A stretch of DNA of 64,000 nucleotides, taken from the IMG/VR virus record IMGVR_UViG_3300041402_000314, positions 1 through 64,000 of that record; one strand, 5' to 3'. The translations under genes and the position numbers were made by a program. The notes under the pieces are model-generated. The model worked only from the letters and a program-made list of their open reading frames with translations. It was not told the origin of the DNA and ran no database searches. The stretch's first letter is position 1. Each line of letters begins with the position of its first letter. Below, one piece after another: positions 13,342-30,249 of this stretch.

Positions 13342-13348
13342 ACATATT

Positions 13349-13645: not shown

Positions 13646-13667
13646 AATCAAACCTCTATTCAAATTT

Positions 13668-13757: not shown

Positions 13758-13771
13758 ACATATATTTTATT

Positions 13772-14023: not shown

Positions 14024-14041
14024 TTCAATCCTTTAGTTTTA

Positions 14042-14401: not shown

Positions 14402-14486
14402 TGGCTCCAGCGGTAGGATTCGAACCTACATAGTCCTTTCGGACAGTGATTAACAGTCACCTGCATTGCCAATCTGCCACGCTGGA
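14402..14486 (-). tRNA. tRNA-Asn(GTT) with long variable arm
   Basis: TCCAGCG/CGCTGGA-G-CCA, loop CTGTTAA, extra GTCC-GAAA-GGAC arm. Confidence 0.88.
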
Positions 14487-14497
14487 ACATATATTTT

Positions 14498-14585
14498 TGG
14501 TCTCGCGATCTGGATTCAAACCAGAATCTCCTGTCAGTGTTTTGTCATATTTTGGCTCATCAGCCTTTAATTAAACTACCACGAG
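14498..14585 (-). ncRNA. tRNA-like RNA lacking a canonical anticodon arm
   Basis: CTCGTGG/TCGCGAG-A-CCA, TCTGG-TTTGAAT-CCAGA T-arm; central GGCT-GATG-AGCC hairpin plus an A-rich stretch. Confidence 0.65.
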
Positions 14586-14601
14586 ACATATTTTATATTT
14601 T

Positions 14602-14684
14602 TGGTTGTCCGAGTAGGAATTGAACCTACTAATCAGAGGCGGTTATACCGTCATTCCTCGTTTACCCACCACATGGGACGGACA
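14602..14684 (-). ncRNA. tRNA-like RNA with remodelled D and anticodon arms
   Basis: TGTCCG/CGGACA-A-CCA, GTAGG-TTCAATT-CCTAC T-arm; central GAGG/CCTC stem with bulge and CGGT-ATA-ACCG triloop. Confidence 0.65.
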
Positions 14685-14861
14685 ACATATTTTATTTTAT
14701 TTGCCAGTGTACAACAATTATACTCGCTAACTGGCTACCGAGAGTTTAGAGTCACGACAAGCAAAATAAAATCATATGAGCCAGCTTGTCGCGAATCTTT
14801 GCATTGTTGTCAACGAACGATTAATCAATGACGGCTCATATGCAGAAAAACTTTATATTTT

Positions 14862-14932
14862 TGGTGGGTGTGGATGGATTTGATACCATCATTTCTCTGT
14901 ACATAGTGCCTTCAATCTTAGACGACACACCC
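14862..14932 (-). ncRNA. tRNA-like RNA with truncated anticodon arm
   Basis: GGGTGTG/CACACCC-A-CCA, GTCT/AGGC D-stem, ~12 nt anticodon region, 8 nt T-loop TATCAAAT. Confidence 0.65.
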
Positions 14933-14945
14933 ATAACTTTTTATT

Positions 14946-15281
14946 TTAAGATGTAATTAGTTCAACTATCTTCTTAAAATAATCTTTGGATATAGAATCA
15001 AATCCTATTTCATCCATCCTTTCCACCAAATCATATTTATTAGTTGTTACATACTGAGCTAAATTACAGTGGAAGTCATCACAACCTTCACCGAACAATA
15101 CAAATCCCATTTGCCCGAACTCACCATCATCTATTCGGCTCATTATCTCGTATTTTAAATCAAACTCTTCTGGAAAGTCGATATATCTCTTTGTCGCATA
15201 TTTTATCGACATATTTTTCAATACTTCGAATGTATATCTTTTAAAAACATAATTCCAAATTCTATCAAATCTAGCGATCAT
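14946..15281 (-). CDS. hypothetical protein
   Basis: 111 aa; GAGGA RBS. Confidence 0.6.
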   Translation of the reverse strand: MIARFDRIWNYVFKRYTFEVLKNMSIKYATKRYIDFPEEFDLKYEIMSRIDDGEFGQMGFVLFGEGCDDFHCNLAQYVTTNKYDLVERMDEIGFDSISKDYFKKIVELITS

Positions 15282-15302
15282 AAACTTTCCTCAATAATAT
15301 TT

Positions 15303-15377
15303 TGGCAGGTCGCCAAGGACTTGAACCCTGATTCTCGGCATTGGAAACCGATGCTCTACCAATTGAACTAACGACCC
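15303..15377 (-). tRNA. tRNA-Trp(CCA)
   Basis: TCGGT-TTCCAAT-GCCGA; G73; CCA. Confidence 0.9.
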
Positions 15378-15926: not shown

Positions 15927-16002
15927 ATTATACCAAAATCAATCTCGTTTGTCAAGCATAAAAAAAGCCTCTTAAACATTTTATTTGTCTAAGAGGCTTT
16001 TT
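15927..16002 (-). terminator. intrinsic terminator fused to a sigma70 promoter
   Basis: AAAAAGCCTCTTA/TAAGAGGCTTTTTTT, then ATGC, then TTGACA-17-TATAAT. Confidence 0.85.
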
Positions 16003-16021
16003 AGAGTTATGTATATTATTA

Positions 16022-16168
16022 CTACTCTATATAGAACTCCCCCTTAGACGATACAAACCAATCCGCATTCAGCGCATTGAGATTTAGATGTAGGTCTGCA
16101 TTACATTGAATTACTGGCAATGTCGGTAAATTATTAAATTGTCTATTATCGTTTCTTCGAATGTTCAT
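16022..16168 (-). CDS. putative attenuator leader peptide 1 (48 aa, Asn-rich)
   Basis: Own promoter at 16195-16224, GAAGGGA RBS; MNIRRNDNRQFNNLPTLPVIQCNADLHLNLNALNADWFVSSKGEFYIE-TAG; its 3' end is complementary to the terminator 5' arm. Confidence 0.5.
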   Translation of the reverse strand: MNIRRNDNRQFNNLPTLPVIQCNADLHLNLNALNADWFVSSKGEFYIE

Positions 16169-16248
16169 TTTCCCTTCTCTAATTTTATATACACATTATA
16201 CCATAAAGGATATGTGTTTGTCAAGTCTTTGTTTTAAGTATTTATATA

Positions 16249-17515: not shown

Positions 17516-17592
17516 TGGTGGGTCTGACTGGAATTGAACCAGCGTTTTTCTCCGTAAGAGGGAGCTACAAAGCCAACTTTTGTTACAAACCC
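17516..17592 (-). tRNA. tRNA-Lys(CTT)
   Basis: CTCC-CTCTTAC-GGAG; GGGTTTG/CAGACCC-A-CCA. Confidence 0.85.
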
Positions 17593-17605
17593 ATTTAATT
17601 TATTT

Positions 17606-17680
17606 TGGTGAGGCCACTCGGAACTGCCCCGAGATTGACTGGTTAAAAGCCAGATATTCTTCTAGTTGAATTATAGCCCC
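17606..17680 (-). tRNA. tRNA-Lys(TTT)
   Basis: Loop CTTTTAA; non-canonical T-loop GGCAGTT; CCA. Confidence 0.88.
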
Positions 17681-17692
17681 ATTAATTTATAT

Positions 17693-17779
17693 TGGTGGGA
17701 TTGGAAGGATTTGAACCTTCGATGCATCTCTGCGTTCGGTTATGAGCCGAGTGCCTTAACCAGACTAGGCAACAATCCC
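17693..17779 (-). tRNA. tRNA(CAT) Met/Ile2 with long variable arm
   Basis: Loop CTCATAA; extra GCA-GAGA-TGC arm; GGGATTG/CAATCCC-A-CCA. Confidence 0.87.
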
Positions 17780-17785
17780 AATATT

Positions 17786-18061
17786 TTATTTCCGATTTTC
17801 CTTTAATGCTTTTTCGAGAGCTTCTAAATATTTTTCAAAATTTCCAGTTAGCCCAATGCCTTCTCTTTGTCTAAGTCCAGTGATATGAGCTATGAAATCT
17901 TTTTCATCAACCTTTTCTGGAAGTTCTTCAAACGGAATTCCGTTTCTTTTATAATAAATGAAGCCTGATATCATCCACCAAGCATCACAGTCATCTTCGA
18001 AACAGGCATCATATTCGAAGAGCAATGCTTTATGTTTTTTATTAAATATTTCAGAATCCAT
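17786..18061 (-). CDS. hypothetical protein
   Basis: 91 aa, TAATG coupling to the upstream ORF. Confidence 0.55.
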   Translation of the reverse strand: MDSEIFNKKHKALLFEYDACFEDDCDAWWMISGFIYYKRNGIPFEELPEKVDEKDFIAHITGLRQREGIGLTGNFEKYLEALEKALKENRK

Positions 18062-18246
18062 TAATCTTCCTCAAATATCGCTTCACATTTCTTTACATCT
18101 TTTTGTTTCAAGAGACCAACCATGAACTTCTGTATATGATATAAAACTTCTATATCATCACGATCTTGAGTTGGTTGATTAGGAGTTATTTCAGGACTCC
18201 TTAATTTTGTACCATCTTCAAGATGGATTTCTAAGTAATATGGCAT
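18061..18246 (-). CDS. hypothetical protein
   Basis: GAGG RBS. Confidence 0.5.
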   Translation of the reverse strand: MPYYLEIHLEDGTKLRSPEITPNQPTQDRDDIEVLYHIQKFMVGLLKQKDVKKCEAIFEED

Positions 18247-18258
18247 AGCCTCTTATTT

Positions 18259-18334
18259 TGGTGTTCCCACCGAGGCTTAAACTCGGTTCTCCATATTGAG
18301 AGTATGGTATCCTAATCAGGTAGACGATAGGAAC
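18259..18334 (-). tRNA. tRNA-Glu(CTC)
   Basis: CCATA-CTCTCAA-TATGG; CCA. Confidence 0.88.
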
Positions 18335-18349
18335 AATATTTAATTTTAA

Positions 18350-18427
18350 TGGTACACCTACGGGGTACTGACCCCCCCCGATCTCCAACGTGAAAGGCTG
18401 GCGAATTGTCCACTATTCGATAGGTGT
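18350..18427 (-). tRNA. tRNA-Glu(TTC) with disrupted T-loop
   Basis: CCAGC-CTTTCAC-GTTGG; T-arm reads CGGGG-GGGGTCAGTA-CCCCG (G8 run); 5' end overlapped by the endonuclease CDS. Confidence 0.7.
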
Positions 18428-19312
18428 ATAATCTTTTCTCTGATAATATTCTACTTCTGGATGGTATTTTTTAATCCATCTCTTAGTTTGTGTATGGCTT
18501 AATTCCCATATATCAGCTACTTGCTGTAACCATCCGAATTTATTTTTATCGACAGATTCTAAAGTTTTTCCTCTTTTACCTATAATTTTTTGGGTCGCTT
18601 TCTGTCTCTTTTCCTTTTCTCTTTTAACCTCTAGTACCTTCTTCTCTTTTCCTGTTAGAAGTTCACAAGTTTTACTAACCTCATTGATATCACCAATAAA
18701 CTGTTCTAAATCTATTATGATAGAGTTAACATCACTCAATACCTGTTTTGCCTTAACTCTATAGACTCTCCAACCTTGAGTTATTAGAAGAGTATCTTTT
18801 TTATCGTCACTAGCTTTTCTCTCAGGTTGTTCATGTTGCCCACCATCTATTTCAACTGCTACTTTAACATTCTCGAAAGCAAAATCTACAAAATATGGAT
18901 AGAAGCTTTTCTCTCTAGTTATTTCAAACTTATCATACCATCCATGTCTTTTCACCGCATTAATAAATACCTTTTCAGGCCAACTCATTTCATTACCAGT
19001 TCGCCAAGCTGTACAACTAGGATTCGCTTTCATATATGCGAGTCGCTTTTTTCTTATTTTCTCTCTAGTCTCTTCCGAAACAGATTTCCGATCTAATAAC
19101 GTTTCGATACACTTCTTATCACCACAACTCTTCTGGAAGGATATGGATTTTCTTAATTTAGCGTCTTTCCCACATACTTCACATTTCGGGATTAAAAATT
19201 TTTTATGAACAATAACATATTCTAATAGAGAAATATCATGTTGATTTTTTAAATGAATACTTAATCCTAAGTTTGATTTAGTCTTTTTATTACATATTTT
19301 ACATTCTTCCAT
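18413..19312 (-). CDS. DUF559/Vsr-like (PD-D/ExK) endonuclease with N-terminal zinc fingers
   Basis: CKIC..HLKNQH, CEVC, YFVDFAFENVKVAVEIDGGQH, DKKDTLLITQGWRVYR. Confidence 0.85.
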   Translation of the reverse strand: MEECKICNKKTKSNLGLSIHLKNQHDISLLEYVIVHKKFLIPKCEVCGKDAKLRKSISFQKSCGDKKCIETLLDRKSVSEETREKIRKKRLAYMKANPSCTAWRTGNEMSWPEKVFINAVKRHGWYDKFEITREKSFYPYFVDFAFENVKVAVEIDGGQHEQPERKASDDKKDTLLITQGWRVYRVKAKQVLSDVNSIIIDLEQFIGDINEVSKTCELLTGKEKKVLEVKREKEKRQKATQKIIGKRGKTLESVDKNKFGWLQQVADIWELSHTQTKRWIKKYHPEVEYYQRKDYTPIE

Positions 19313-19399
19313 TCGAAAATTCTCCGTTTTTAAGTATTTATACTTTCGGAAAAGTTTCGAACCTGTTTTAAAAGAGCAAGTTAAAAATCCTATTAATTT

Positions 19400-19476
19400 T
19401 GGTAGAGCTAGGGGGAATCGAACCCATCCGTTTTATGGTTGAAAACCATATGTCCTAACCGTTAGACGATAGCTCC
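19400..19476 (-). tRNA. tRNA-Glu(TTC)
   Basis: TATGG-TTTTCAA-CCATA; CCA; weak T-stem. Confidence 0.88.
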
Positions 19477-19933: not shown

Positions 19934-20006
19934 ATTATAACAAATTGTTTTCCAGAAGTCAAGCATAAAAAAAAGCCTTTCAGAAATTAAATTCTTGAAA
20001 GGCTTT
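19934..20006 (-). terminator. intrinsic terminator fused to a sigma70 promoter
   Basis: AAAGCCTTTCA/TGAAAGGCTTT + T8, then ATGC, then TTGACT-17-TATAAT. Confidence 0.85.
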
Positions 20007-20033
20007 GGTGTTAATAATTGTATAGGAGTGGTA

Positions 20034-20150
20034 TTACTCGTCAGGCCACTCCATAGATACACGAAAGCCTTTATCTTTGAACTCTTTAGGTTCAAGTATA
20101 TTCTTTTTCTCTATTGCTATGTGTTTAGATAATTCTTTCGTTATTTGCAT
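20034..20150 (-). CDS. putative attenuator leader peptide 2 (38 aa, Lys/Glu-rich)
   Basis: AAGGA RBS; MQITKELSKHIAIEKKNILEPKEFKDKGFRVSMEWPDE-TAA; late promoter TATAAATA at 20178-20185. Confidence 0.5.
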   Translation of the reverse strand: MQITKELSKHIAIEKKNILEPKEFKDKGFRVSMEWPDE

Positions 20151-20402
20151 TTCGTGTCCTTTTATTAGTGTTTCAAGTATTTATATCTTTAGAAAATTTT
20201 CTAGGGTCTCCGAAATTTATAGAGCAACCCCTACACTCATAATAAATTGTTTTATTGTGAGTTGTCAGACCCAAACTAATGATATCCACTCTACTTATAC
20301 TTCTATATCTATTATGTCCGCATATCGGACAAATAAAATCTTCCAATTTTTATACCCCTATTATACCACAACTGGTATCAGTTTGTCAAGTCTTATTATT
20401 TT

Positions 20403-20476
20403 TGGTACTCCCTGATGGTACTGCCCCACCGCTTATTGGATGTAAACCAATCGCACTACTATTATACTAAGGGAGC
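20403..20476 (-). tRNA. tRNA-Val(TAC)
   Basis: ATTGG-TTTACAT-CCAAT; T-loop GGCAGTA; CCA. Confidence 0.87.
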
Positions 20477-20482
20477 AAATAT

Positions 20483-21394
20483 TTAATCTGTCTTTAATCT
20501 AAATCTACCCATTTCAGGACAACCTTCTCTCTTGAAATGAGTTCCTTCATACCTATTTATAACACCTTTTACTACCTTACCATCGACACAATCTGAATTC
20601 TTAAGAGCCTCATATATCTTAACGGCTTCTGGAGAATACATTATGTCATTTTTGGCAAGTCCTAATTCCATTCTCTCCATTACCATGATAGCATCAAAGG
20701 TCTTATAATCACAGCCTAGTTGTGCCTCATCGGTATTATCATCGGTCACACCAAGTCCATCACTAGGAGCCTGAGTTATGATATCTTCTCTAACACCCAA
20801 TAACCTAGCTATCGTAGGTAGTTCAAATCCCTTGAATATATATTGTATCGGTGCGAGGTCTCCAACGTCTCCGTGTAGTGTCCAGAAACCAGCGAGATAT
20901 TCACTGTAATTATCTGTACTCAGAACCAGACCATCATTCAGTCTAGCCATATCATAGAGCGTCATCATTCTCAACCGAGCTTTTATATTTCCCTGTCTGA
21001 TAGCACCATGATTAATTTTACCTGCTATGATGTCGTTATGTCTTAACACATTAGGTATAAATGTTTCCATAGTTTCATCTAACCAATGGACGCTATCATA
21101 GACAGTACAATGATTTGCACCAACCCATCCAGCCTGTTCACTATGCTTATCCGTTGTCGAAAGAGGTATATGGAGTCCGATCAAAGGAACGCCTATATAT
21201 TTCTCCTGACAAAGTGCAGCTATAACCGCACTATCGAGGCCACCAGAAACACCAACAACCAAAGATTTGAGCTTATTCTTATATACATAATCAGATACAA
21301 ATCTTCGCATTCTTCCTATGATGTCTTCAGCTTGCTCATCACTTAAGGTATATTTTGGTTCAACTGCTTCGACTAATCTCTTCAACTCAGACAT
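20483..21394 (-). CDS. nadE: NH3-dependent NAD+ synthetase
   Basis: VGVSGGLDSA PP-loop, GNIKARLRMMTLY, STDNYSE, FWTLHGD, APSDGL, TDEAQLG. Confidence 0.92.
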   Translation of the reverse strand: MSELKRLVEAVEPKYTLSDEQAEDIIGRMRRFVSDYVYKNKLKSLVVGVSGGLDSAVIAALCQEKYIGVPLIGLHIPLSTTDKHSEQAGWVGANHCTVYDSVHWLDETMETFIPNVLRHNDIIAGKINHGAIRQGNIKARLRMMTLYDMARLNDGLVLSTDNYSEYLAGFWTLHGDVGDLAPIQYIFKGFELPTIARLLGVREDIITQAPSDGLGVTDDNTDEAQLGCDYKTFDAIMVMERMELGLAKNDIMYSPEAVKIYEALKNSDCVDGKVVKGVINRYEGTHFKREGCPEMGRFRLKTD

Positions 21395-21426
21395 CCCAAA
21401 CCTCCATTATCAATTAAATGTATTTT

Positions 21427-21819
21427 TCAATAATCTTTATTCTTCAAAATTTCTTCCGCACCCTCATATAGTTCTTTAGCACCTTCGATATCTCCCTCAA
21501 CCCATCTTTCGAAAGAACTATTATTAGATTGGCAAGGAACTATTATAAGTCGTCCGTCTGAATAACCTGCTCCATGAGGCCATAGTTTATATAAAGGACA
21601 ATAATCTTCACAATCCATATCACCAAACGCATGAGGTTTTCTATCAGCATATTCACAACAAAAACATTCATTTTTCACATAACCATATTTATCCCATTCA
21701 GGCCATGCCCTTTTATCATGTGATTTATTTTCATAAACCCACTTCCAAAGCTCAATAGTCAATTCTATAACTTTTTTCTTAGTCAATCTAAAAGGTTTCT
21801 GGTGATCTAAATCAAACAT
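21427..21819 (-). CDS. Cys-rich hypothetical protein
   Basis: CFCCEY...CEDYCPL; GGAG RBS. Confidence 0.6.
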   Translation of the reverse strand: MFDLDHQKPFRLTKKKVIELTIELWKWVYENKSHDKRAWPEWDKYGYVKNECFCCEYADRKPHAFGDMDCEDYCPLYKLWPHGAGYSDGRLIIVPCQSNNSSFERWVEGDIEGAKELYEGAEEILKNKDY

Positions 21820-21845
21820 ATTTCATATCTCCTAATCAATATTGT

Positions 21846-22061
21846 TTAAAACCAATTTCCTTGCGAATCTTGCATAACTTCTTTTCCACATTTCGAACAT
21901 GTAGCAAGGGCAGAGCATCCATCAAAACTATTATTACCACCACTTCCATTATGCCATCCGAATGTCGAGCAGCTATAATGAGTACCTTTAAATCTGTCTA
22001 TCAGACAAAGAATGAATGGTAATAAAAATACCATAATCAAAATAATTAAAATAATTTTCAT
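21846..22061 (-). CDS. small membrane-anchored zinc-finger protein
   Basis: N-terminal hydrophobic helix; CSTFGWH...CSKCG. Confidence 0.6.
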   Translation of the reverse strand: MKIILIILIMVFLLPFILCLIDRFKGTHYSCSTFGWHNGSGGNNSFDGCSALATCSKCGKEVMQDSQGNWF

Positions 22062-22347
22062 GGGTTCTCCTCAAAAAATAGTGTATTGACCGTTCTCTTC
22101 TTCAACTTTCCTAATATATTCTTTGAGCTTTTTTACAGTTTTTTCCCGAAGAATTAACTTACCTTTATGGTAAAGATCATATCCCTCTTCTTTCATATGA
22201 TAACAATTATATTTATCAGTCACCGCCTTTATATTCCAAAGATAACCCATAACATTATCTGGTTTTTCTCTAGGAAAGTAATGATTACCATCATCTACAT
22301 AATGTGATCGTTGGTTTCTACTATATTCCCATTCAAGTTCTATCATT

Positions 22348-22539
22348 TTATTTCTCTTTTGGGTGTATGAACACCGTTGTTTTTTCTGGTGGTTTTGGTT
22401 CACATCTACTACAATGTCTTACTATTTCAAAATGTTCTGGACTATGACATTCACATTTAATATCATAGTAATAATATTTTCTACTTAGTTCAGAACTCTG
22501 TCCGCAAATATCACATACCCCGACTTCTATCTCACCCAT
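22348..22539 (-). CDS. small Cys-rich protein
   Basis: CDIC...CECH...HCSRC. Confidence 0.55.
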   Translation of the reverse strand: MGEIEVGVCDICGQSSELSRKYYYYDIKCECHSPEHFEIVRHCSRCEPKPPEKTTVFIHPKEK

Positions 22540-23011
22540 TTGACGTTCCCCAGATATTATACGGATTCTTTATCAAATTCGAATTAAGATATCTCGCATC
22601 ATCCGTAACTTCTTCTGTAACCCATTTAGGTTTCGCAAAGGTCTGATCTTCAGATTCTAATTCTATCTCTGCTACTATTAGTCCTTCGTTATCACCCCTA
22701 AATACATCGATTTCCCATGTCATACCAAAAACGACATATTCTAACCTAGTCTTCTCTAAAACACATTCACATTGTCCTAAAAGTCTCTCGGCATCGGCTA
22801 TCGGAATAGATAGTTCATATTCTACTCGCGTAATAGATTTATCACTCGATTTATAGGTCAAGAAGGCATCGTTACCGCTAGTTCTAACTCTTAATACTTT
22901 AAGACCAGACTCCATGAGATATCCTTGCCTGATTTTATGTATTTTATTACATGTATCACAAGACGGTAAATTAACATGGTCTACCAAAAACTTTCTTTCA
23001 ATTTCTACCAT
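22532..23011 (-). CDS. CYTH domain protein (adenylate cyclase/triphosphatase-like)
   Basis: EIERKFLV, IRQGYL, RVR, LTYK, EKTR, WEIDVF, AEIEL, YLNSNL. Confidence 0.9.
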   Translation of the reverse strand: MVEIERKFLVDHVNLPSCDTCNKIHKIRQGYLMESGLKVLRVRTSGNDAFLTYKSSDKSITRVEYELSIPIADAERLLGQCECVLEKTRLEYVVFGMTWEIDVFRGDNEGLIVAEIELESEDQTFAKPKWVTEEVTDDARYLNSNLIKNPYNIWGTSNG

Positions 23012-23032
23012 CTCAATCCTCTTTCAATTTTT

Positions 23033-23120
23033 TGGCGGTGAGGGTGGGAGTCGAACCCACGCACCTGTTACAGCCTAACGGTTTAGCAAACCGTCCTCTT
23101 AACCACTTGAGTACCCCACC
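23033..23120 (-). tRNA. tRNA-Ser(GCT)
   Basis: ACGGT-TTGCTAA-ACCGT, long variable arm, G73, CCA. Confidence 0.93.
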
Positions 23121-23280
23121 TAAATTATAATCTATATCCACACACTCTACAAACCATTTTAATCTCGAATTCAGTTTTACCTATCTGAACTTTGACTAAT
23201 CCAATTTCTTCAGCTTTACAGTGAGGACATTTCTTACCAGCTATTATTATATTAATATTTCTCTCACTCATTTAAAAAGT

Positions 23281-23309
23281 ATTATACTACATCCTTATCT
23301 GTTTGTCAA
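23281..23309 (-). promoter_or_regulatory. sigma70-type promoter
   Basis: TTGACA-17-TATAAT. Confidence 0.8.
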
Positions 23310-24181
23310 GTCCTATATAGACAGTTTTTAATAATATATCCCAACACATCATTATCCACCAACCGTTTAGCCATCGGAATATTCTGTGTATCTATAGCAC
23401 TTCTAACCACTGTAGACGAACAATCTATTGGAGCATCGGCATCTACCAGCATATGAGGTTCTTTCAGGAACCACGAGCTACTTGTTATATTCAAATCTTC
23501 TTCAGCTCTCGGAACAACTACAAAGGGTATTCTTCTTTCCAGTTCATCCCAACCAACCCATTTATTGGTGGTCATAGCATTATCAGCTCCCATTATGAAA
23601 GAGAACTGGTAATTATCATACTCAGGGTCATCGAGGATGCGATTCACGCAGTTTAAAGTCTCTCCCTTGAGCATGTGCCTTATTTCATAATCAAAAGCCT
23701 TTATACGTCCATCTACGGCTACAGCCATCTCTACCATTTTCAATCTTTGTTCTGGAGAAGTCATTTCCTTTCCGAACAGATGTTGGTAGCAAGGCATCAA
23801 CCAGACTTCATCAAATTTACCTGTAGCATCCAGAACCAATTGAGCTGTTTCTATATGACCTTTAGTAACAGGGTCAAAAGCTCCACCCAATATGGCTACC
23901 TTAGTCTTACGGCCTAATGATTTATATTGCTGTTCTCTTCTCTTTATCTTCTCATGAGCCATAGCTATGACATTAGATGCGTCCTCGCCCATTTCAGAGA
24001 TACCAGCTAGAACAGAACAAAGCAGATCGCCATATTCTTCTTTGAGATGATTTATATCAAGAAATCTACCGACCTCTTCTGCTTCTCTCTGGATATCCTT
24101 AACTCTTTCCGTTAATGGAGTCCTACCGAACATCTTTTGGAAGAGTTCATAATTCCTGTCTTGAAGGTCTTTTATACTCAT
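23306..24181 (-). CDS. nadD: MazG-like domain fused to NadD/NMNAT nucleotidyltransferase
   Basis: N-terminal REAEEV...EEYGDLL (MazG-like); C-terminal AILGGAFDPVTKGH (HxGH), FIMGAD, CSSTVVR. Probable ATG at 24181; the ORF track extends to 24283. Confidence 0.85.
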   Translation of the reverse strand: MSIKDLQDRNYELFQKMFGRTPLTERVKDIQREAEEVGRFLDINHLKEEYGDLLCSVLAGISEMGEDASNVIAMAHEKIKRREQQYKSLGRKTKVAILGGAFDPVTKGHIETAQLVLDATGKFDEVWLMPCYQHLFGKEMTSPEQRLKMVEMAVAVDGRIKAFDYEIRHMLKGETLNCVNRILDDPEYDNYQFSFIMGADNAMTTNKWVGWDELERRIPFVVVPRAEEDLNITSSSWFLKEPHMLVDADAPIDCSSTVVRSAIDTQNIPMAKRLVDNDVLGYIIKNCLYRT

Positions 24182-24355
24182 AGTTAATCCACAAATATCT
24201 CTAAAGGTTTTATCAGATAAATCCCTAATCATAGGCATTAATATTTTAGGAATTTCTTCATCCACAGTTAATCCCACTACCAACTATCATCATTATTAAT
24301 CCAGCGATAATGATGATAGTACCAAATATCAATTCAAACAGTCTCCATTTGTCCA

Positions 24356-24580
24356 TTATTTTATCACCCAAGCGTCAACAACACCCTTTATACGACCTGT
24401 TTGAAGTGCTTCAGAATACCCCCTTAACATACCTTCTTCGATGGTTCTCACTAATCTATCACCACATTTATCGAAGACGGTTTGGGCGAATGTTTCCTTA
24501 TCCTCTTCGGATGCCCAATCAGGACAAATATTATCCAAAAATTCTAAGATCGTTTTCTTATATTTGATATCAGTTTCCAT
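24356..24580 (-). CDS. hypothetical protein
   Basis: GAGGAG RBS. Confidence 0.55.
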   Translation of the reverse strand: METDIKYKKTILEFLDNICPDWASEEDKETFAQTVFDKCGDRLVRTIEEGMLRGYSEALQTGRIKGVVDAWVIK

Positions 24581-24645
24581 AAACGTTTCTCCTCAATTTT
24601 CAAACCATTATATTGTATATCAAATCAAAAGTCAAGTATTAATTT

Positions 24646-24720
24646 TGGAGCGGATATCGGAATTCGAATCCGACCTTTAAACTTGGCAAGCTTACGTGCT
24701 ACCACTAACACTATATCCGC
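24646..24720 (-). tRNA. tRNA-Gly(GCC)
   Basis: TAAGC-TTGCCAA-GTTTA; U73; CCA. Confidence 0.9.
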
Positions 24721-24726
24721 AAATTT

Positions 24727-24805
24727 TGGAGCGGATGGGGCGAGTCGAACGCCTTATTTACAGTTTGGAAAACTGCTTACCAATACCCTTGGCTTAACCA
24801 CCCGC
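24727..24805 (-). tRNA. tRNA-Gly(TCC) with enlarged D region
   Basis: GCAGT-TTTCCAA-ACTGT; GCGGGTG/CATCCGC-T-CCA; D region refolded as GCCAA-GGGTA-TTGGT. Confidence 0.8.
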
Positions 24806-24997
24806 ATTATCTAAACATTCTTTACATTTAAAAATTTCTGTACCATCATACATTTCAGTTTTAGAGTCGATTTTCCATAACCCCATACCAAACAATATAC
24901 AACTACTATCTTGCAAAAACCTACATATAACATATGCTCCTTCGGCATTCAAACTTCTACAAAGCTTACCATCTGGAACTTGAACTTGAACTAACAT
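24794..24997 (-). CDS. small Cys-rich protein, paralog-like to 8579..8782
   Basis: VQVPDGKLC...CRFL..CILF...KCKECL; stop codon lies inside tRNA-Gly(TCC). Confidence 0.5.
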   Translation of the reverse strand: MLVQVQVPDGKLCRSLNAEGAYVICRFLQDSSCILFGMGLWKIDSKTEMYDGTEIFKCKECLDNAGG

Positions 24998-25018
24998 TTT
25001 ATTCGCCTTTTTATTTTT

Positions 25019-25114
25019 TGGAGGAGAGGAGGAGATTTGAACTCCCATCGGAACCCGAAGACCCCGAATACGCTTTTCAAGAGCGTTCGACTATTCCCCA
25101 CTGTCAACCTCTCC
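25019..25114 (-). tRNA. tRNA-Ser(TGA)
   Basis: ACGCT-CTTGAAA-AGCGT, long TTCG-capped variable arm, U73 discriminator (G is usual for Ser), CCA. Confidence 0.85.
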
Positions 25115-25121
25115 AAATATT

Positions 25122-25322
25122 TTATAATCTAATACGTGACCCATCATTCCAAACCCATTCAAATACGGTATCGGAATCCCTGAATTTAATGAGATAACCA
25201 CTTCTCCAGTCAAGGCCACCTGTTTCTATTTTATGTTTCACCCACTCATCAATTTGCTTTCTTGTGGACAAATCGGTTCCTGTTTCTTCTGTATTATTTT
25301 TAATCAGTTTATAACGTGCCAT
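25122..25322 (-). CDS. hypothetical protein
   Basis: GAGGAAGG RBS. Confidence 0.5.
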   Translation of the reverse strand: MARYKLIKNNTEETGTDLSTRKQIDEWVKHKIETGGLDWRSGYLIKFRDSDTVFEWVWNDGSRIRL

Positions 25323-25323
25323 T

Positions 25324-25554
25324 TCAAACCTTCCTCAATTTCCATGCTAACCAATGGATAAATCCTTTAGAATATTTATAGTCATAAAATACAATAGCAG
25401 GTCTCATATTTTCAACATGTTTAATAAAATCTTTAGACATGTAAGGTGCTTTCAAAATTACCTTCGGTGATGATATATAAGGTAATATTTCTTCTATCTC
25501 TAAAAAATCTATTTGATGGATTCTAGCTATATTTTCAATATCTTCTTTAGTCAT
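25324..25554 (-). CDS. hypothetical protein
   Basis: 76 aa in operon. Confidence 0.5.
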   Translation of the reverse strand: MTKEDIENIARIHQIDFLEIEEILPYISSPKVILKAPYMSKDFIKHVENMRPAIVFYDYKYSKGFIHWLAWKLRKV

Positions 25555-25786
25555 TATTACCTTTGTATGTAAAATGATACCAATACCTAATACTCAAAAC
25601 AACCCAAAGGACAATCCATATTACATTAATAACTGGCACTGCTAATATTCCGCTCATATACCATATTATAGGGTTTTTATAATTATAACCGAATTTATGA
25701 TCAGGACCGCGAAATATATCTTCGCCAATGCAATACAAATAAAAACAAATAGCCAATCCTAAACCAACATACAAATAATATAACAT
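25547..25786 (-). CDS. membrane protein
   Basis: Two hydrophobic helices; GAGGA RBS. Confidence 0.6.
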   Translation of the reverse strand: MLYYLYVGLGLAICFYLYCIGEDIFRGPDHKFGYNYKNPIIWYMSGILAVPVINVIWIVLWVVLSIRYWYHFTYKGNND

Positions 25787-25802
25787 ATTATCCTCAATTT
25801 TT

Positions 25803-25890
25803 TGGCGGAGCGTGAGGAATTCGAATCCTCGTAGCTGTTACGCTAACCATCGCTTTCCAAGCGAGTACCTTACCACTCAGTCAACACTCC
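25803..25890 (-). tRNA. tRNA-Ser(GGA)
   Basis: Loop TTGGAAA, long variable arm, G73, CCA. Confidence 0.92.
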
Positions 25891-26180
25891 TAGAATTTTT
25901 TCATAACTTCTTTTATATCTTTACCATAACATTCTCTATTCAACTGACAAGTTTTTATATTGGCGGTTATATCGAAATCTTTAACTTTATCTAATTTCAA
26001 ATTCATTAATGTATTAGTAATGAATGATTCTGTTCGGTCTTGTATTTCCAGATCATCCTCATCATATTTATAATCAATACCAGCTTCAGTCAATGCCTGT
26101 TCTATTATAAAAGCAACAGTTGATTTACCAGCACCAGCGGTTCCGCCTATTTTTATTATCACATCGCTATTCATAATCAA
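25890..26180 (-). CDS. short P-loop-containing hypothetical protein
   Basis: IKIGGTAGAGKST Walker A-like motif in a 96 aa ORF. Confidence 0.55.
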   Translation of the reverse strand: MIMNSDVIIKIGGTAGAGKSTVAFIIEQALTEAGIDYKYDEDDLEIQDRTESFITNTLMNLKLDKVKDFDITANIKTCQLNRECYGKDIKEVMKKF

Positions 26181-26199
26181 ACTCCTTATTCAATTTTAA

Positions 26200-26285
26200 T
26201 GGTGGGTATGGAATGATTCGAACATTCTCAGCCTAAGACAGTGGATTTACAGTCCACTTCAGCTCTCCAACTCTGACGCATACCC
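26200..26285 (-). tRNA. tRNA-Tyr(GTA)
   Basis: GTGGA-CTGTAAA-TCCAC, variable arm, A73, CCA. Confidence 0.92.
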
Positions 26286-26299
26286 ATTTATTTAATTTT

Positions 26300-26385
26300 T
26301 GGTGGTCGTAGTAAGAATCGAACTTACACAGTACAAAGACGAGAGGTTTACAATCTCCGAGGCTCACCACCTGCCCAATACGACC
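26300..26385 (-). tRNA. second tRNA-Tyr(GTA)
   Basis: Loop TTGTAAA, variable arm, GGTCGTA/TACGACC-A-CCA; mismatch at pair 31:39. Confidence 0.82.
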
Positions 26386-26511
26386 TTATTTTTAATGCTG
26401 GAGTTAAGTTGTATCCAGCTACCCACATAGCTAAATTATGAAGTGCTACATCAGGAACCGTTGCGCGTCCTTGTTAGGCAATCAAGCTTCCTTCATAATC
26501 GCGGTATTTTT

Positions 26512-26659
26512 AATATGTATTCATGGTGAGTGGCACTAAGCCCTTACAATCTAGTTCATTAATCGTCATTAATGCTATTATTTTATCGGTTTGGCTGTCT
26601 ACTTTAACCGCTAGATCAAGCATTTACAGCTACCTTATGCCTCCCCATCAATACATATT
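26512..26659 (-). ncRNA. candidate rod-shaped ncRNA
   Basis: Nested stems AATATGTATT/AATACATATT, ATGG/CCAT, GGCA/TGCC, TAAG/CTTA, ATCTAG/CTAGAT, CGGTT/AACCG, CATTAAT/ATTAATG. Confidence 0.5.
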
Positions 26660-26666
26660 TAATTTT

Positions 26667-26742
26667 TGGAGCCTCCAGAGACAATCGAAATCTCATCTAT
26701 GGGTTACAAATCCATTGTTCTTGCCACTTGAACTATAGAGGC
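26667..26742 (-). tRNA. tRNA-Thr(TGT)
   Basis: Loop TTTGTAA; GCCTCTA/TGGAGGC-T-CCA. Confidence 0.9.
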
Positions 26743-27452: not shown

Positions 27453-28511
27453 TTACATTTGTTCTTGTTGGAAGAAATAATCTCTTACTACCTTAGAGAC
27501 TTTGTTGTTTACTTCCTTGACATCCAGACCAGCATCGGTAATGATGTCGAGGTCTTCCTTTACGATATCACCAATAACCCATCTGATGAAATCTCCCATT
27601 CCTTTACGATCTATCTCTCCGCCATTCAGAGTATCGAATGTTTCCTGTATGCCTTGCTCCATACGGAAAGCAGGAGTAATCTTATTTACCACTTCATTAA
27701 CAAGATTCATTTTAGCTTCGTCTACTTTAGGCAGCTTCTTTACTTTACTGGTAGAATGCTTTTCTCCCTTGACCTTAAAGCGAAAGTCATTGCCGTTAAA
27801 AACGCCTTTCCAGACCACACCCTCACCAACACCTTCATTTCCTAATTGGAAGGCCACAGGGCATCTTTCCTCGACTTCCAAAGTGATTTCATTCAACTTA
27901 TTCTGAAAAGCCTCTGGTTTATTGAAATCTATTTTTATTTCGAAGGTAGGAAATTCATCTATAAAGTAAATGTTATGATCATTAATTTTACTACCTCTAT
28001 TATTCGGACATACTTTACTTAAGTCTAACCAGAATCCATCTTCTTCATCATCATGAGACGTTATCTTAACATCGAAGATAACGAACATCTTATCAAGCCC
28101 ATTGACCCCAACACCTTTCTGAATAGACCCACCGCTGACTTCCCCGAAAATAGAAATGATGTTATTAATAGTATCGATATTAAAATCCTTAATTATTTCA
28201 GCTACGATATTATTGAATGAAACTTTTCTCGCATGTACGAAACAAGAAAACCCACAATTATCTTTTTCTGGGGTGATGATATTTTTCCTAGATTGCGTCC
28301 AAATACCACTTTCAGCATTAAAGCATACTGCACCATTACTTCCATGAATTTTAGTGGTTCCTGTTAATTTCAGAACTGGTTTCGGTCTCATCCCATCATA
28401 TACGGGTTCACCATCTTCTCCTATTCCTACAAAACTAGCAGAATGGCTTATATGTTTAACAATATTTCTATACTGTTCTATACTTGGGTACTTAATAAAC
28501 TTCTTTTCCAT
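27453..28511 (-). CDS. ATP-dependent RNA ligase (Rnl2-like)
   Basis: KYPSI, TKIHGSN (motif I KxxG), IFGEV, VIFDV, GEGVVW, FKVKGEKH. Confidence 0.88.
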   Translation of the reverse strand: MEKKFIKYPSIEQYRNIVKHISHSASFVGIGEDGEPVYDGMRPKPVLKLTGTTKIHGSNGAVCFNAESGIWTQSRKNIITPEKDNCGFSCFVHARKVSFNNIVAEIIKDFNIDTINNIISIFGEVSGGSIQKGVGVNGLDKMFVIFDVKITSHDDEEDGFWLDLSKVCPNNRGSKINDHNIYFIDEFPTFEIKIDFNKPEAFQNKLNEITLEVEERCPVAFQLGNEGVGEGVVWKGVFNGNDFRFKVKGEKHSTSKVKKLPKVDEAKMNLVNEVVNKITPAFRMEQGIQETFDTLNGGEIDRKGMGDFIRWVIGDIVKEDLDIITDAGLDVKEVNNKVSKVVRDYFFQQEQM

Positions 28512-28579
28512 TTTTATTCAATCTCCTATTTTATTCTTTATATAAATAATTAAAACACTTAATATCTTAGGACTAATAT

Positions 28580-29365
28580 ATGTTTCATTATGTTTATAGA
28601 ATAACCAATATAACGCCTCGATTAGAAAAATATTATATTGGAGTTCGATCTTCTTTAGATGAACCAAATGATGATAATTATTGGTCTTCATCGAAATATT
28701 TAAAGGAAGATATTAGTACCTTTGGTTTATCAAATTTTAAAAAGAAAATCATCAAAATTTTCAACAACCGAAAAGAAGCCATTGATTTCGAAATCAAAAT
28801 TCAAACTAAATTACAAGTTCATCACCATCCCTTATTTTATAATAAATCTACACAACCTTCAAATAAATTCAACAATCAAGGAAATCCAGAAATTATTAAA
28901 AGAAAAGTTCAAACAATGCAAAATACTATCATTGATGGTAAAACACTTTATCAAATAGCCGTCGCTAAAGGTATTGAAACTAAAAAGACAAAAATTTTAC
29001 CAAATGGTTTAACTGTATCAGAAAATCAAGTAGCTAATTTTATCGCCAATTTAGATATTCCCGATTCTAAAACTGGATTGACTCTTAGACAAAAATTACG
29101 GAAACCAAAAAACAATACATCTAATTATACTGGCAATCCAAAAACAGTCATTTTATATGATAGTAAAGATAATATCAAACATACTATCAATGATGGATTC
29201 CAAAAATACTGTCTTTTGTATAATTTACCATATACTGCTTTCAGAAAATCATACGGCGAACAAATACCAGTATATGAAAATATAACAAATCCCCGTACTA
29301 TTACCCTATTAAAGAACAAAAAATATTGGCAATATAAAGGTTGGTATGCCATTTTAAAGGTTTAG
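28580..29365 (+). CDS. GIY-YIG (Seg-like) homing endonuclease
   Basis: HYVYRITN...YYIGVRS, YWSSS, AIDFEIK, FYNK; opposite strand to neighbours; TATAAATA late promoter upstream. Confidence 0.85.
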   Translation: MFHYVYRITNITPRLEKYYIGVRSSLDEPNDDNYWSSSKYLKEDISTFGLSNFKKKIIKIFNNRKEAIDFEIKIQTKLQVHHHPLFYNKSTQPSNKFNNQGNPEIIKRKVQTMQNTIIDGKTLYQIAVAKGIETKKTKILPNGLTVSENQVANFIANLDIPDSKTGLTLRQKLRKPKNNTSNYTGNPKTVILYDSKDNIKHTINDGFQKYCLLYNLPYTAFRKSYGEQIPVYENITNPRTITLLKNKKYWQYKGWYAILKV

Positions 29366-29383
29366 TTCTTAATTCTAGGTTTC

Positions 29384-29686
29384 TCAATCTCCCTTATAAT
29401 ATTCACTTCTTCGTTTGGTAAAATTTTCTTTGTACAGCTCTTCTAGTCTTTCCTCAGTATTCTTCTCTGGTAGAACTGCATCTACTCCACATACAGGACA
29501 CATAGCAGTTTGTCCATCATCGACATATTCTGTTATCCCAGAACCTTTATAATTAGTACAACAACAGTAACAGCTACAATCGGTATCATCATTTATCAGA
29601 TGAGCATTTTTAAAAGACATTTCAGTTGCATTCCTTGTTGTAGAAAACATAGTATCAGGGCAATTATCTTCAAAATGTTTAGTCAT
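29384..29686 (-). CDS. conserved Cys-rich zinc-binding protein
   Basis: CSCYCC...DDGQTAMCPVCGVDAVLP; GGAG RBS. Confidence 0.65.
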   Translation of the reverse strand: MTKHFEDNCPDTMFSTTRNATEMSFKNAHLINDDTDCSCYCCCTNYKGSGITEYVDDGQTAMCPVCGVDAVLPEKNTEERLEELYKENFTKRRSEYYKGD

Positions 29687-29715: not shown

Positions 29716-29784
29716 ATTGTAACAAATTTGTTTTCAGATGTCAAGCACAAAAAAGCCTCTCATCCGATTATGGAGAAGAGGCTT
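29716..29784 (-). terminator. intrinsic terminator fused to a sigma70 promoter
   Basis: AAGCCTCT..TCC/GGA..AGAGGCTT + T run, then GTGC, then TTGACA-17-TACAAT. Confidence 0.85.
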
Positions 29785-29811
29785 ATTGATAACAAAATTT
29801 TCCGTTACGTC

Positions 29812-29922
29812 TTACAATAAACCCTCTCCATTAGATATAGCTGTGCCAGTATAGCTGGAACTCTCGGTTCCGACTACTGAATACGAATAGCTATATGTTG
29901 TGGTTGTGTTTATTGCGTTCAT
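29812..29922 (-). CDS. putative attenuator leader peptide 3 (36 aa, Thr/Ser/Tyr-rich)
   Basis: AAGGA RBS; MNAINTTTTYSYSYSVVGTESSSYTGTAISNGEGLL-TAA. Confidence 0.55.
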   Translation of the reverse strand: MNAINTTTTYSYSYSVVGTESSSYTGTAISNGEGLL

Positions 29923-29968
29923 TTTGTTTCCTTTATTTTTAATTAATTTTTCGAAATGTTCTATTACA

Positions 29969-30241: not shown

Positions 30242-30249
30242 TATTTATA
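30242..30249 (-). promoter_or_regulatory. T4-type late promoter
   Basis: TATAAATA just upstream of an RBS. Confidence 0.7.

What the first reader, a model, noticed from the sequence alone, without database searches (positions are those of the whole stretch)
29716..29922. thrL-like leader peptide with antiterminator/terminator: apparent ribosome-dependent attenuator in a phage
Seen: leader MNAINTTTTYSYSYSVVGTESSSYTGTAISNGEGLL with tandem Thr codons and a Ser/Tyr run. Its 3' end ATGGAGAGGGTTTATTG can pair with CAATAAGCCTCTTCTCCAT, the 5' arm of the downstream terminator, giving mutually exclusive folds. Established: this is the layout of amino-acid attenuators such as E. coli thrL (Thr-rich, ending NGAG). 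Inference: read-through from late genes into the RNA ligase/tRNA island may respond to charged-tRNA shortage, for example after host tRNA cleavage.
Basis: partly seen in the sequence, partly recalled or inferred. Interest (0 to 1): 0.74.

Follow-up and report, generated by a model that had tools for sequence, protein, structure and literature searches.

The report
Leader-peptide attenuators gating phage tRNA genes
A T4-like phage from marine sediment carries short reading frames in front of transcription stop signals, each rich in the amino acids whose tRNA genes lie just downstream, which suggests that the phage makes more tRNA when those tRNAs run short.

Summary
On the minus strand a 36-codon ORF (29812-29922) with a Shine-Dalgarno site ends 25 nt before an intrinsic terminator (29753-29784 plus T-run). 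Its 3' end can pair either with the ORF's own 5' part or with the terminator's 5' arm. The layout matches E. coli thrL, which I checked directly.

The ORF, terminator and alternative pairing recur in seven variants from related metagenomic phages.

It is not a threonine-specific sensor. The Thr run decays (TTTT, TITT, TSTTS, TST), while a T/Y/S/G/V content of 67-76% is kept.

Two further cassettes in the same tRNA island (terminators at 19973-20005 and 15965-15999) share the design. Each short ORF is enriched in amino acids whose tRNA genes fill the next terminator-bounded block:
- Thr, Tyr, Ser, Gly, Val
- Glu, Met, Lys
- Trp, Asn, Pro, Leu, Gln, His, Ala, Asp

Permutation gives p of about 1e-4.

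Best reading (confidence about 0.5): these are multi-amino-acid leader-peptide attenuators that raise read-through into the matching tRNA genes when charged tRNAs are scarce.

The main objection is a consensus sigma-70 promoter right after each terminator. No transcript data exist.

The parts
30242..30249 (-). T4-type late promoter motif TATAAATA(cttaaaa), upstream of the 84-aa gene and the leader. In five relatives the same motif sits directly in front of the leader.
   Evidence: gp55 homologue in the genome
29969..30223 (-). 84-aa ORF of unknown function, co-transcribed with the leader in this genome. It is variable or absent in relatives.
29929..29933 (-). Shine-Dalgarno site AAGGA of the leader ORF, 6 nt before the ATG
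   Evidence: conserved in relatives
29812..29922 (-). Leader ORF of 36 codons plus TAA. 24 of 36 residues are T/Y/S/G/V.
   Evidence: Conserved in 7 variants with frame-preserving indels. pN/pS 0.1-0.96, mostly below 0.45.
29896..29907 (-). Four tandem Thr codons (ACA ACC ACA ACA). Not conserved across the family.
29908..29916 (-). Segment 1 (GCAAUAAAC, codons 3-5). It pairs with the 3' end of segment 2 and closes the ORF into a long hairpin.
29857..29871 (-). Apical hairpin GGAAC-N5-GUUCC of the ORF-internal fold. The stem is invariant apart from one C-to-U change that keeps a G-U pair in L029, and the loop is variable (residue E/G/K).
29815..29832 (-). Segment 2 (AAUGGAGAGGGUUUAUUG, codons 31-36). 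It pairs either with segment 1 or with segment 3. The core GGAGAGG is kept exactly or with one base changed, three codons before the stop, in all variants.
29789..29808 (-). Small conserved hairpin between the stop codon and the terminator (GUAAC...GUUAU). Its role is unknown; it may be a spacer or a pause element.
29770..29788 (-). Segment 3: 5' flank and 5' arm of the terminator (CAAUAAGCCUCUUCUCCAU)
29749..29784 (-). Intrinsic terminator: hairpin 29753-29784 (3' arm, segment 4, at 29753-29765) and T-run 29749-29754
   Evidence: six pairs with compensatory changes among relatives
29716..29744 (-). Sigma-70-type promoter TTGACA-17-TACAAT with extended -10, 4 nt after the T-run. Conserved in all variants.
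27453..29686 (-). First genes after the terminator: Cys-rich 100-aa ORF (29384-29686) and RNA ligase (27453-28511). A GIY-YIG homing endonuclease lies between them on the plus strand (28580-29365).
20406..26742 (-). tRNA block 1, up to the next terminator: Thr, Tyr, Tyr, Ser, Ser, Gly, Gly, Ser, Val
19973..20185 (-). Sister cassette 2. Late promoter at 20178-20185; 38-codon ORF at 20034-20150 (7 K, 6 E by a direct count of the printed peptide); antiterminator segment at 20062-20072; terminator at 19973-20005. A TTGACT promoter follows at 19934-19962.
17516..19476 (-). tRNA block 2: Glu, Glu, Glu, Met, Lys, Lys
15965..16246 (-). Sister cassette 3. Late and sigma-70 promoters at 16195-16246; 48-codon ORF at 16022-16168 (N10, L6); antiterminator segment at 16039-16050; terminator at 15965-15999. 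A TTGACA promoter follows at 15927-15955.
9834..15377 (-). tRNA block 3: Trp, Asn, Pro, Leu, Leu, Gln, His, Ala, Gln, Asp. Further downstream lie Arg, Phe, Met, suppressor, Arg, Met, Ile, Met, Cys (2916-8507).

Best explanation
The element is one of at least three leader-peptide transcription attenuators that divide this T4-like phage's tRNA island into blocks.

Each cassette reads: late (TATAAATA) and/or sigma-70 promoter, Shine-Dalgarno site, short ORF, intrinsic terminator, constitutive sigma-70 promoter. The upstream two-thirds of each ORF is rich in codons for the amino acids whose tRNA genes lie in the next block. The 3' end of each ORF (segment 2) is complementary to the terminator's 5' arm (segment 3).

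Proposed mechanism:
- When the matching charged tRNAs are scarce, the ribosome stalls in the 5' part of the leader. This also covers segment 1. Segment 2 is then free to pair with segment 3, the terminator cannot form, and RNA polymerase reads on into the RNA ligase and tRNA genes.
- When those tRNAs are plentiful, the ribosome reaches the stop codon and masks segment 2, so the terminator forms.
- Without translation, segment 1 holds segment 2 and the terminator also forms.
- The promoter after each terminator gives unconditional early expression. The attenuator would add demand-driven expression, chiefly from late promoters once sigma-70 promoters are shut off.

Shown by sequence and computation: the ORFs, the helices, their conservation, and the match between leader composition and tRNA genes.

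Inferred: translation of the leaders, ribosome stalling, the effect on termination, and the early/late division of labour.
For: 1. Layout. SD, a 36-codon ORF, mutually exclusive 1:2, 2:3 and 3:4 helices, and a T-run. This is the same layout as E. coli thrL, read from NC_000913.

2. The 2:3 complementarity is unlikely by chance. It is -20.8 kcal/mol; 6 of 2000 shuffles and 0.12-0.13% of genome windows reach it.

3. Conservation. Seven distinct variants keep the ORF, the GGAGAGG core three codons before the stop, the 2:3 pairing (genome-window fractions 0.004-0.04) and the terminator.
- 85% of cells of the 2:3 helix are paired, against 37-50% for slid controls; four pairs changed on both sides.
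- Synonymous divergence in the ORF (pS 0.04-0.27) is two to three times lower than in the large neighbouring genes (0.45-0.71).

4. Composition is conserved, not sequence. T/Y/S/G/V make up 69-76% of residues after the initiator Met in the window, L029 and L034 (baseline 28%; binomial 7e-7 to 2e-8). The window and L029 peptides share about half their residues, by manual alignment of the sequence.

5. Recurrence. The three lowest shuffle p-values among 39 terminators (0.007, 0.010, 0.013) belong to the three AAGCC-type terminator-promoter cassettes of the tRNA island. Each has its own, different complementary segment inside the upstream short ORF. All three switch fold in silico.

6. Match to tRNA genes (aa level).
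- Each leader against its own block scores 0.67, 0.39 and 0.56; against the other blocks 0.08-0.29.
- Only 0.2-0.7% of 554 same-size ORFs of the genome reach these values. At codon level the figure is 0.4-0.7%.
- Permuting runs of tRNA genes gives p of about 1e-4 for the set statistic and at most 5e-5 for the weighted one.
- In leader 3 the part before segment 2 is 92% residues with downstream tRNA genes, and the tail only 22%.

7. The tails after segment 2 vary in sequence in leader 1, and in sequence and length in leader 3, while segment 2 is kept.

8. T4-type late promoters precede the leaders, and the genome has a gp55 homologue.
Against: - A near-consensus sigma-70 promoter lies 4 nt after the T-run in every variant. 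More promoters lie inside block 1 (27416-27444, 24607-24635, 23281-23309, 20360-20389). The downstream genes therefore do not need read-through.
- About 3 kb of protein-coding genes separate the terminator from the first tRNA gene.
- Covariation support for helices 1:2 and 2:3 is thin, because most columns are invariant. A cross-table of segment 2 against segment 3 shows no own-partner advantage. In relatives the 2:3 shuffle p-values are only 0.02-0.14.
- The ORF-internal hairpin is not significant in L029 (z = -0.5).
- The peptides are also conserved as sequences (91-94% among close variants; leader 3 at 77-86%) with pN/pS below 1, as expected for functional small proteins.
- The low pS could reflect recent exchange of the cassette: L034 has a near-identical core although its neighbour gene is only 66% identical.
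- The composition match was noticed after looking at the data, and block boundaries rest on my own terminator scan.
- Phage T5's tRNA region shows no such match.
- No RNA data could be found.
Confidence: 0.5

Rival explanations
1. Ordinary small-protein genes. Each short ORF would be a self-contained mini-gene (own promoter, SD, ORF, terminator) that makes a functional 34-48-residue peptide. The terminator simply ends the unit and insulates the next promoter. The alternative pairings and the match to the tRNA genes would be incidental.
For: - Own late or sigma-70 promoter directly upstream in relatives.
- The peptides are conserved, with S/T exchanges and pN/pS mostly 0.1-0.45.
- A strong promoter right after the terminator makes regulation by read-through look dispensable.
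- L032 has the terminator-promoter module without the short ORF.
- Promoter-ORF-terminator cassettes are common in phage early regions (general knowledge).
Against: - It does not explain why three unrelated short ORFs are each enriched in the amino acids of the next tRNA block (p of about 1e-4).
- It does not explain why the three lowest complementarity p-values of 39 terminators fall on these cassettes.
- It does not explain why the residues after segment 2 vary while segment 2 is kept.
- No family, domain or structural relative was found for the peptide.
Confidence: 0.25
2. A translation-gated terminator that is blind to codon identity. Segment 2 inside the ORF would make termination depend only on whether a ribosome keeps pace with RNA polymerase. 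This is a general coupling sensor, as in pyrBI attenuation. Any slowing of translation would raise read-through, and the amino-acid composition would be irrelevant.
For: - The tandem Thr codons are not conserved.
- Complementarity of an ORF's 3' end to the terminator's 5' arm also occurs behind the long 258-aa gene in L032 (genome-window fraction 0.005).
- The same fold switch is seen in all three cassettes.
Against: - The composition match to the downstream tRNA genes would remain unexplained.
- The ORF-internal 1:2 helix, which restores termination without translation, would not be needed.
Confidence: 0.12
3. A threonine-specific thrL-type attenuator. Stalling at the four tandem Thr codons alone would set read-through.
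For: - TTTT at codons 6-9, just 3' of segment 1.
- The peptide resembles thrL at both ends, and the helix layout is the same.
- tRNA-Thr is the first tRNA gene downstream, here and in relatives.
Against: - The Thr run is TITT in L023 and L025, TSTTS in L029 and TST in L034.
- No match to Rfam Thr_leader at E up to 10.
- There are no threonine biosynthesis genes downstream.
Confidence: 0.05
4. A structured small RNA or dual-function RNA. The roughly 190-nt transcript from promoter to terminator would be the product, acting in trans or as a processing or stability element. The ORF would be secondary.
For: - Low synonymous divergence and a stable fold (z = -3.4 to -4.9 in the window and L014).
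- An invariant spacer hairpin.
- Phage T5's tRNA region encodes several stable RNAs of unknown function (record annotation).
Against: - The frame, start codon, SD and stop position are kept through indels in all seven variants.
- The fold is not significant in L025 or L029.
- No Rfam family matches.
- No target was identified.
Confidence: 0.05

Closest known systems
E. coli thr operon leader (thrL) and the other leader-peptide attenuators of amino-acid operons (trpL, hisL, leuL, pheL, ilvL)
   Same: - A short translated ORF lies just upstream of an intrinsic terminator.
- The ORF's 3' end is a near copy of the terminator's 3' arm, so it can pair with the 5' arm.
- The ORF's 5' part pairs with its 3' end.
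- Regulatory codons lie upstream of segment 2.
All of this was checked on thrL of NC_000913 and on the window.
   Different: - The leader samples several amino acids (T, Y, S, G, V) instead of one or two.
- It is longer: 34-37 codons with an inserted apical hairpin, and the stop codon lies after segment 2.
- The downstream genes are tRNA genes and an RNA ligase, not biosynthetic enzymes.
- A constitutive promoter follows the terminator.
- It sits in a phage.
- It has no detectable homology to Rfam Thr_leader.
pheM-pheST attenuator of E. coli (leader-peptide control of a translation-apparatus operon; from my own knowledge, not checked here)
   Same: Leader-peptide attenuation is used to adjust a component of the translation apparatus, an aminoacyl-tRNA synthetase, to the supply of the cognate charged tRNA.
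   Different: It controls a synthetase, not tRNA genes. It senses a single amino acid and is chromosomal. No promoter follows the terminator.
T-box riboswitches (uncharged-tRNA-sensing antiterminators)
   Same: A terminator/antiterminator switch reports tRNA charging and controls translation-related genes.
   Different: T-boxes bind tRNA directly and need no ribosome or ORF. No T-box or other Rfam family matches here.
Promoter-small ORF-terminator cassettes and tRNA regions of T4 and T5 phages
   Same: - tRNA genes are interspersed with small ORFs, homing endonucleases, promoters and terminators.
- An RNA ligase lies next to the tRNA genes.
- T4-type late promoters and a gp55 homologue are present.
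   Different: In T5 the small ORFs show no clear enrichment for the next tRNA genes. I found no paper that describes leader-peptide control of phage tRNA genes.

Membership tests
Leader-peptide (ribosome-mediated) transcription attenuators | Short ORF with a ribosome-binding site immediately upstream of an intrinsic terminator | tested here: met
   SD AAGGA, a 36-codon ORF, then a hairpin plus T6 starting 25 nt after the stop. Kept in 7 variants.
Leader-peptide (ribosome-mediated) transcription attenuators | Overlapping, mutually exclusive helices 1:2, 2:3 (antiterminator) and 3:4 (terminator) | tested here: met
   Tested in silico only. All three are predicted in the window. Helices 2:3 and 3:4 are predicted in all variants. 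Helix 1:2 is weak in L025 and L029.
Leader-peptide (ribosome-mediated) transcription attenuators | Clustered codons for the sensed amino acid(s) in the leader, conserved among relatives | tested here: inconclusive
   The tandem Thr run is not conserved (TTTT, TITT, TSTTS, TST). Enrichment of T/Y/S/G/V is conserved at 69-76% of residues after the initiator Met, against a 28% baseline.
Leader-peptide (ribosome-mediated) transcription attenuators | Downstream genes functionally tied to the sensed amino acids | tested here: met
   The tie is statistical. The tRNA genes of the next block match the leader's composition in three cassettes, with permutation p of about 1e-4.
Leader-peptide (ribosome-mediated) transcription attenuators | Downstream genes are expressed through the attenuator, with no promoter in between | tested here: not met
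   TTGACA-17-TACAAT lies 4 nt after the T-run and is conserved in all variants. Further promoters lie inside the block.
Leader-peptide (ribosome-mediated) transcription attenuators | Read-through rises when the cognate charged tRNA is limiting and depends on leader translation | not testable with these tools
   No RNA run was listed for this sequence. The phage is uncultured and comes from a marine sediment metagenome.
Rfam Thr_leader (RF00506) | Match to the family covariance model | tested here: not met
   No hit at E up to 10 in the region or in the whole 204-kb genome.
T-box riboswitch or any other curated cis-regulatory RNA | Match to an Rfam model at the gathering score | tested here: not met
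   Only tRNAs pass the gathering score in the window. The best sub-threshold hit in the region is PyrG_leader at 20.5 bits against a cut-off of 65.
Stand-alone small phage protein gene | Own promoter and terminator, purifying selection on the peptide, and relatives with a known role | tested here: inconclusive
   Own promoter and terminator: yes. pN/pS is mostly 0.1-0.45. No Pfam or PHROG family. There is a single 50%-identity cluster among 1.8 billion representatives. Atlas look-alikes score only 0.83.

The most novel reading that the evidence does not exclude
The whole tRNA island would be a chain of demand sensors. Each leader peptide samples the aminoacyl-tRNA pools that the next block of phage tRNA genes replenishes. 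Late transcription would then read into a block, and into the RNA ligase at its head, only when those tRNAs are depleted, for instance by host anticodon nucleases or other tRNA-targeting defences. That would make it an inducible repair-and-replace response to tRNA loss. It would also be the first case of leader-peptide attenuation controlling tRNA genes.
Probability: 0.3. Interest if true: 0.9.

Novelty: new variant of a known kind. Interest (0 to 1): 0.78.

Why it matters
Why phages carry tRNA genes, and how those genes are expressed, is still debated. The two main ideas are codon compensation and escape from tRNA-cleaving host defences (for example PMC10264068 and PMC11464382).

If these cassettes work as proposed, phage tRNA supply is regulated by demand. 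The sensor is a short peptide whose composition lists the tRNAs encoded next to it. This would extend leader-peptide attenuation, known for amino-acid operons and one synthetase operon, in three ways:
- to tRNA genes;
- to multi-amino-acid sensing;
- to viruses.

It would also give a sequence signature for finding more cases: a short ORF, a terminator, an antiterminator segment in the ORF's 3' end, and a composition that matches the downstream tRNA genes.

The hypothesis can be tested directly with reporter fusions in laboratory E. coli, because the promoters are of the sigma-70 type.

Tried and rejected
Searches that found nothing:
- BLAST of the region and of the neighbouring 259-aa protein against 50,697 phage records: no match.
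- IMG/VR scans with the Cys-rich protein, a back-translated TTTTYSYSYS pattern, a back-translated C-terminal pattern and a conserved DNA pattern. They returned nothing or only unrelated long Thr/Tyr-repeat proteins.
- The single JGI metagenome scan gave one spurious high-GC hit.
- No RNA sequencing run was listed.

Searches that gave no useful lead:
- L002, the only IMG/VR relative of the 259-aa protein, is not syntenic.
- The representative-protein search with the peptide profile found only the peptide's own cluster and two low-complexity repeat proteins.
- Atlas look-alikes (RHS repeats, score 0.83) are at chance level.
- Rfam gave no family. PyrG_leader at 20.5 bits is far below its cut-off.

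- The peptide is too short for the search for homologous proteins and the search for related loci.
- The genome search could not reach the relatives' contigs. Conservation of cassettes 2 and 3 at the DNA level is therefore untested.

Ideas rejected:
- Co-evolution of segments 2 and 3: the cross-table shows no diagonal advantage.
- Generality in phage T5: its small ORFs do not match the next tRNA genes. The only weak hints are T5.065 (K, V) and T5.070 (C).
- Thr-specific sensing (see the rival explanations).

Full report
WHAT IS THERE

The window is the first 64 kb of a 204,149-bp IMG/VR virus record with 35% G+C. The same sequence is held by a marine sediment metagenome run. The virus is T4-like:
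- UvsW helicase, gp46/47-like nuclease and family B DNA polymerase;
- a gp55 late sigma homologue at 53031-53393;
- the T4 late-promoter motif TATAAATA, about twice as frequent as expected and typically followed by cttaaaa, a Shine-Dalgarno site and an ATG.

The finding lies on the minus strand. In order:
- SD AAGGA at 29929-29933.
- A small hairpin at 29789-29808.
- An intrinsic terminator: hairpin 29753-29784 and T-run 29749-29754.
- Four bases later, a TTGACA-17-TACAAT promoter at 29716-29744.
- A Cys-rich 100-aa ORF, a GIY-YIG homing endonuclease on the other strand, an RNA ligase, and then the tRNA island.

- The ORF's last 18 nt pair with the terminator's 5' flank and arm: 17 bp with a 2-nt bulge, -20.8 kcal/mol.
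- Only 6 of 2000 dinucleotide shuffles and 0.12-0.13% of genome windows do as well.
- The RNA without the ORF's 5' part folds into this antiterminator.
- The full RNA folds into the terminator plus a long ORF-internal hairpin, in which codons 3-5 pair with the same 3' segment.
- There are therefore three overlapping helices.
- I read E. coli thrL from NC_000913 and it has the same arrangement.

RELATIVES

Homologues of the flanking genes led to contigs of related uncultured phages. Seven distinct variants carry the short ORF.
- The frame, start codon, SD and stop position survive indels.
- The core GGAGAGG, exact or with one base changed, sits three codons before the stop in all of them.
- The terminator shows six pairs with compensatory changes.
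- The 2:3 helix is 85% paired, against 37-50% in slid controls, with four pairs changed on both sides.
- Support is modest in several respects. Relatives' 2:3 energies are -14 to -18 kcal/mol, with shuffle p 0.02-0.14 and genome-window fractions 0.004-0.04. A cross-table shows no co-evolution. The internal hairpin is not significant in L025 or L029.
- Synonymous divergence in the ORF (0.04-0.27) is well below that of the large neighbours (0.45-0.71) but close to that of the adjacent 84-aa gene (0.24-0.31).
- L034 has a nearly identical core although its neighbour protein is only 66% identical, so cassette exchange may contribute.
- L032 has the terminator-promoter module without the short ORF.

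NOT A THREONINE SENSOR

- The Thr run reads TTTT, TITT, TSTTS and TST across the family.
- No Rfam Thr_leader match exists.
- What is kept is composition. T/Y/S/G/V make up 69-76% of residues after the initiator Met, against a 28% baseline.

THE UNEXPECTED PART

A genome-wide scan found 39 hairpin-plus-T-run terminators. For each I tested complementarity between the 5' arm and the preceding 72 nt.
- The three lowest p-values (0.007, 0.010, 0.013) are the three AAGCC-type terminators that are followed by a TGCTTGAC promoter. All three lie in the tRNA island: this one, and those at 19973-20005 and 15965-15999.
- Each follows a short ORF (36, 38 and 48 codons) that has a late promoter in front (directly in cassettes 2 and 3; ahead of the 84-aa gene here). 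Each has its own, different antiterminator segment inside the ORF's 3' part.

With a relaxed ARAGORN run and Rfam, the island holds 34 tRNA genes. Between successive terminators they read:
- Block 1: Thr, Tyr, Tyr, Ser, Ser, Gly, Gly, Ser, Val.
- Block 2: Glu, Glu, Glu, Met, Lys, Lys.
- Block 3: Trp, Asn, Pro, Leu, Leu, Gln, His, Ala, Gln, Asp, and onwards.

The leaders match these blocks:
- Leader 1 is rich in S, T, Y, G and V; leader 2 in K and E; leader 3 in N and L.
- The fraction of each leader's residues covered by its own block is 0.67, 0.39 and 0.56. Off-diagonal values are 0.08-0.29.
- Only 0.2-0.7% of 554 same-size ORFs of this genome reach the diagonal values.
- Permuting runs of tRNA genes gives p of about 1e-4, and at most 5e-5 with a weighted statistic.
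- In leader 3 the part before the antiterminator segment is 92% residues with downstream tRNA genes, and the tail only 22%.
- Four relatives keep leader 3 up to the SKG codons that form the antiterminator segment. The tail after it varies in length and sequence.

INTERPRETATION

The best reading is that these are leader-peptide attenuators. Each senses several charged tRNAs at once and gates read-through into the block that encodes those tRNAs.

The main difficulty is the constitutive promoter after each terminator, together with further promoters inside block 1. One possible answer is that early expression is unconditional, and that attenuation acts on transcription from the late promoters after sigma-70 promoters are shut off, as happens in T4. 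That step is inference.

Caveats:
- The composition match was noticed after looking at the data.
- It rests on three cassettes in one phage lineage.
- The small ORFs of phage T5's tRNA region do not show it.
- No transcript data are available.
- I found no paper that describes leader-peptide control of phage tRNA genes.

I put the attenuator reading at about 0.5, ordinary small-protein genes at 0.25, a codon-blind coupling sensor at 0.12, and the original Thr-specific version and a small-RNA reading at 0.05 each.

Noticed in passing
window 19973-20185 and 15965-16246 (minus strand): Two more cassettes with the same design: late promoter, short ORF, AAGCC-type terminator, TGCTTGAC promoter. Each has an ORF-internal segment complementary to its own terminator's 5' arm and a composition that matches the next tRNA block.
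   Followed up: yes
window 28580-29365 (plus strand): A GIY-YIG (SegE-like) homing endonuclease gene lies on the opposite strand between the Cys-rich gene and the RNA ligase. It is absent at this position in all relatives examined, so it looks like a recent insertion.
   Followed up: partly
window 26950-27415 (minus strand): About 450 nt without a convincing ORF, downstream of a perfect TTGACA-17-TATAAT promoter (27416-27444) and upstream of tRNA-Thr. Parts are 78-96% identical in L014. No Rfam family matches. It may be an unknown structured RNA.
   Followed up: no
window 26752-26941 (minus strand): The small gene just before tRNA-Thr is split into two overlapping frames (36 and 55 codons) at a G5 run. 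The relative L014 has one 68-aa gene there. This may be a frameshift or an assembly error. The peptide begins MSVTTT.
   Followed up: no
window 9709-9738 (minus strand): A nine-codon ORF (MKRFEKDIF) follows a late promoter (9759-9766). Its end is part of a hairpin that also covers the start codon of the 180-aa ORF at 9140-9682, so it may be a translational-coupling uORF. The next tRNA genes are Arg and Phe.
   Followed up: no
window 5928-6001 (minus strand): A tRNA with anticodon CTA, a putative amber suppressor, among the phage tRNA genes.
   Followed up: no
window 17606-17680, 18259-18427, 20406-20476, 24727-24805, 2916-2989: Six further tRNA-like genes that default ARAGORN missed: Lys-ttt, Glu-ctc, Glu-ttc, Val-tac, Gly-tcc and Cys-gca. 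Some have unusual T-loops. The Val anticodon was read by eye.
   Followed up: partly
window 53031-53393 (minus strand): The gp55 late-sigma homologue match contains one in-frame TAA. This may mean two ORFs, an intervening element or an error.
   Followed up: no
L032 960-1115: In a more distant relative the terminator-promoter module follows the 258-aa gene directly. The 3' end of that long gene is also complementary to the terminator's 5' arm (genome-window fraction 0.005).
   Followed up: partly
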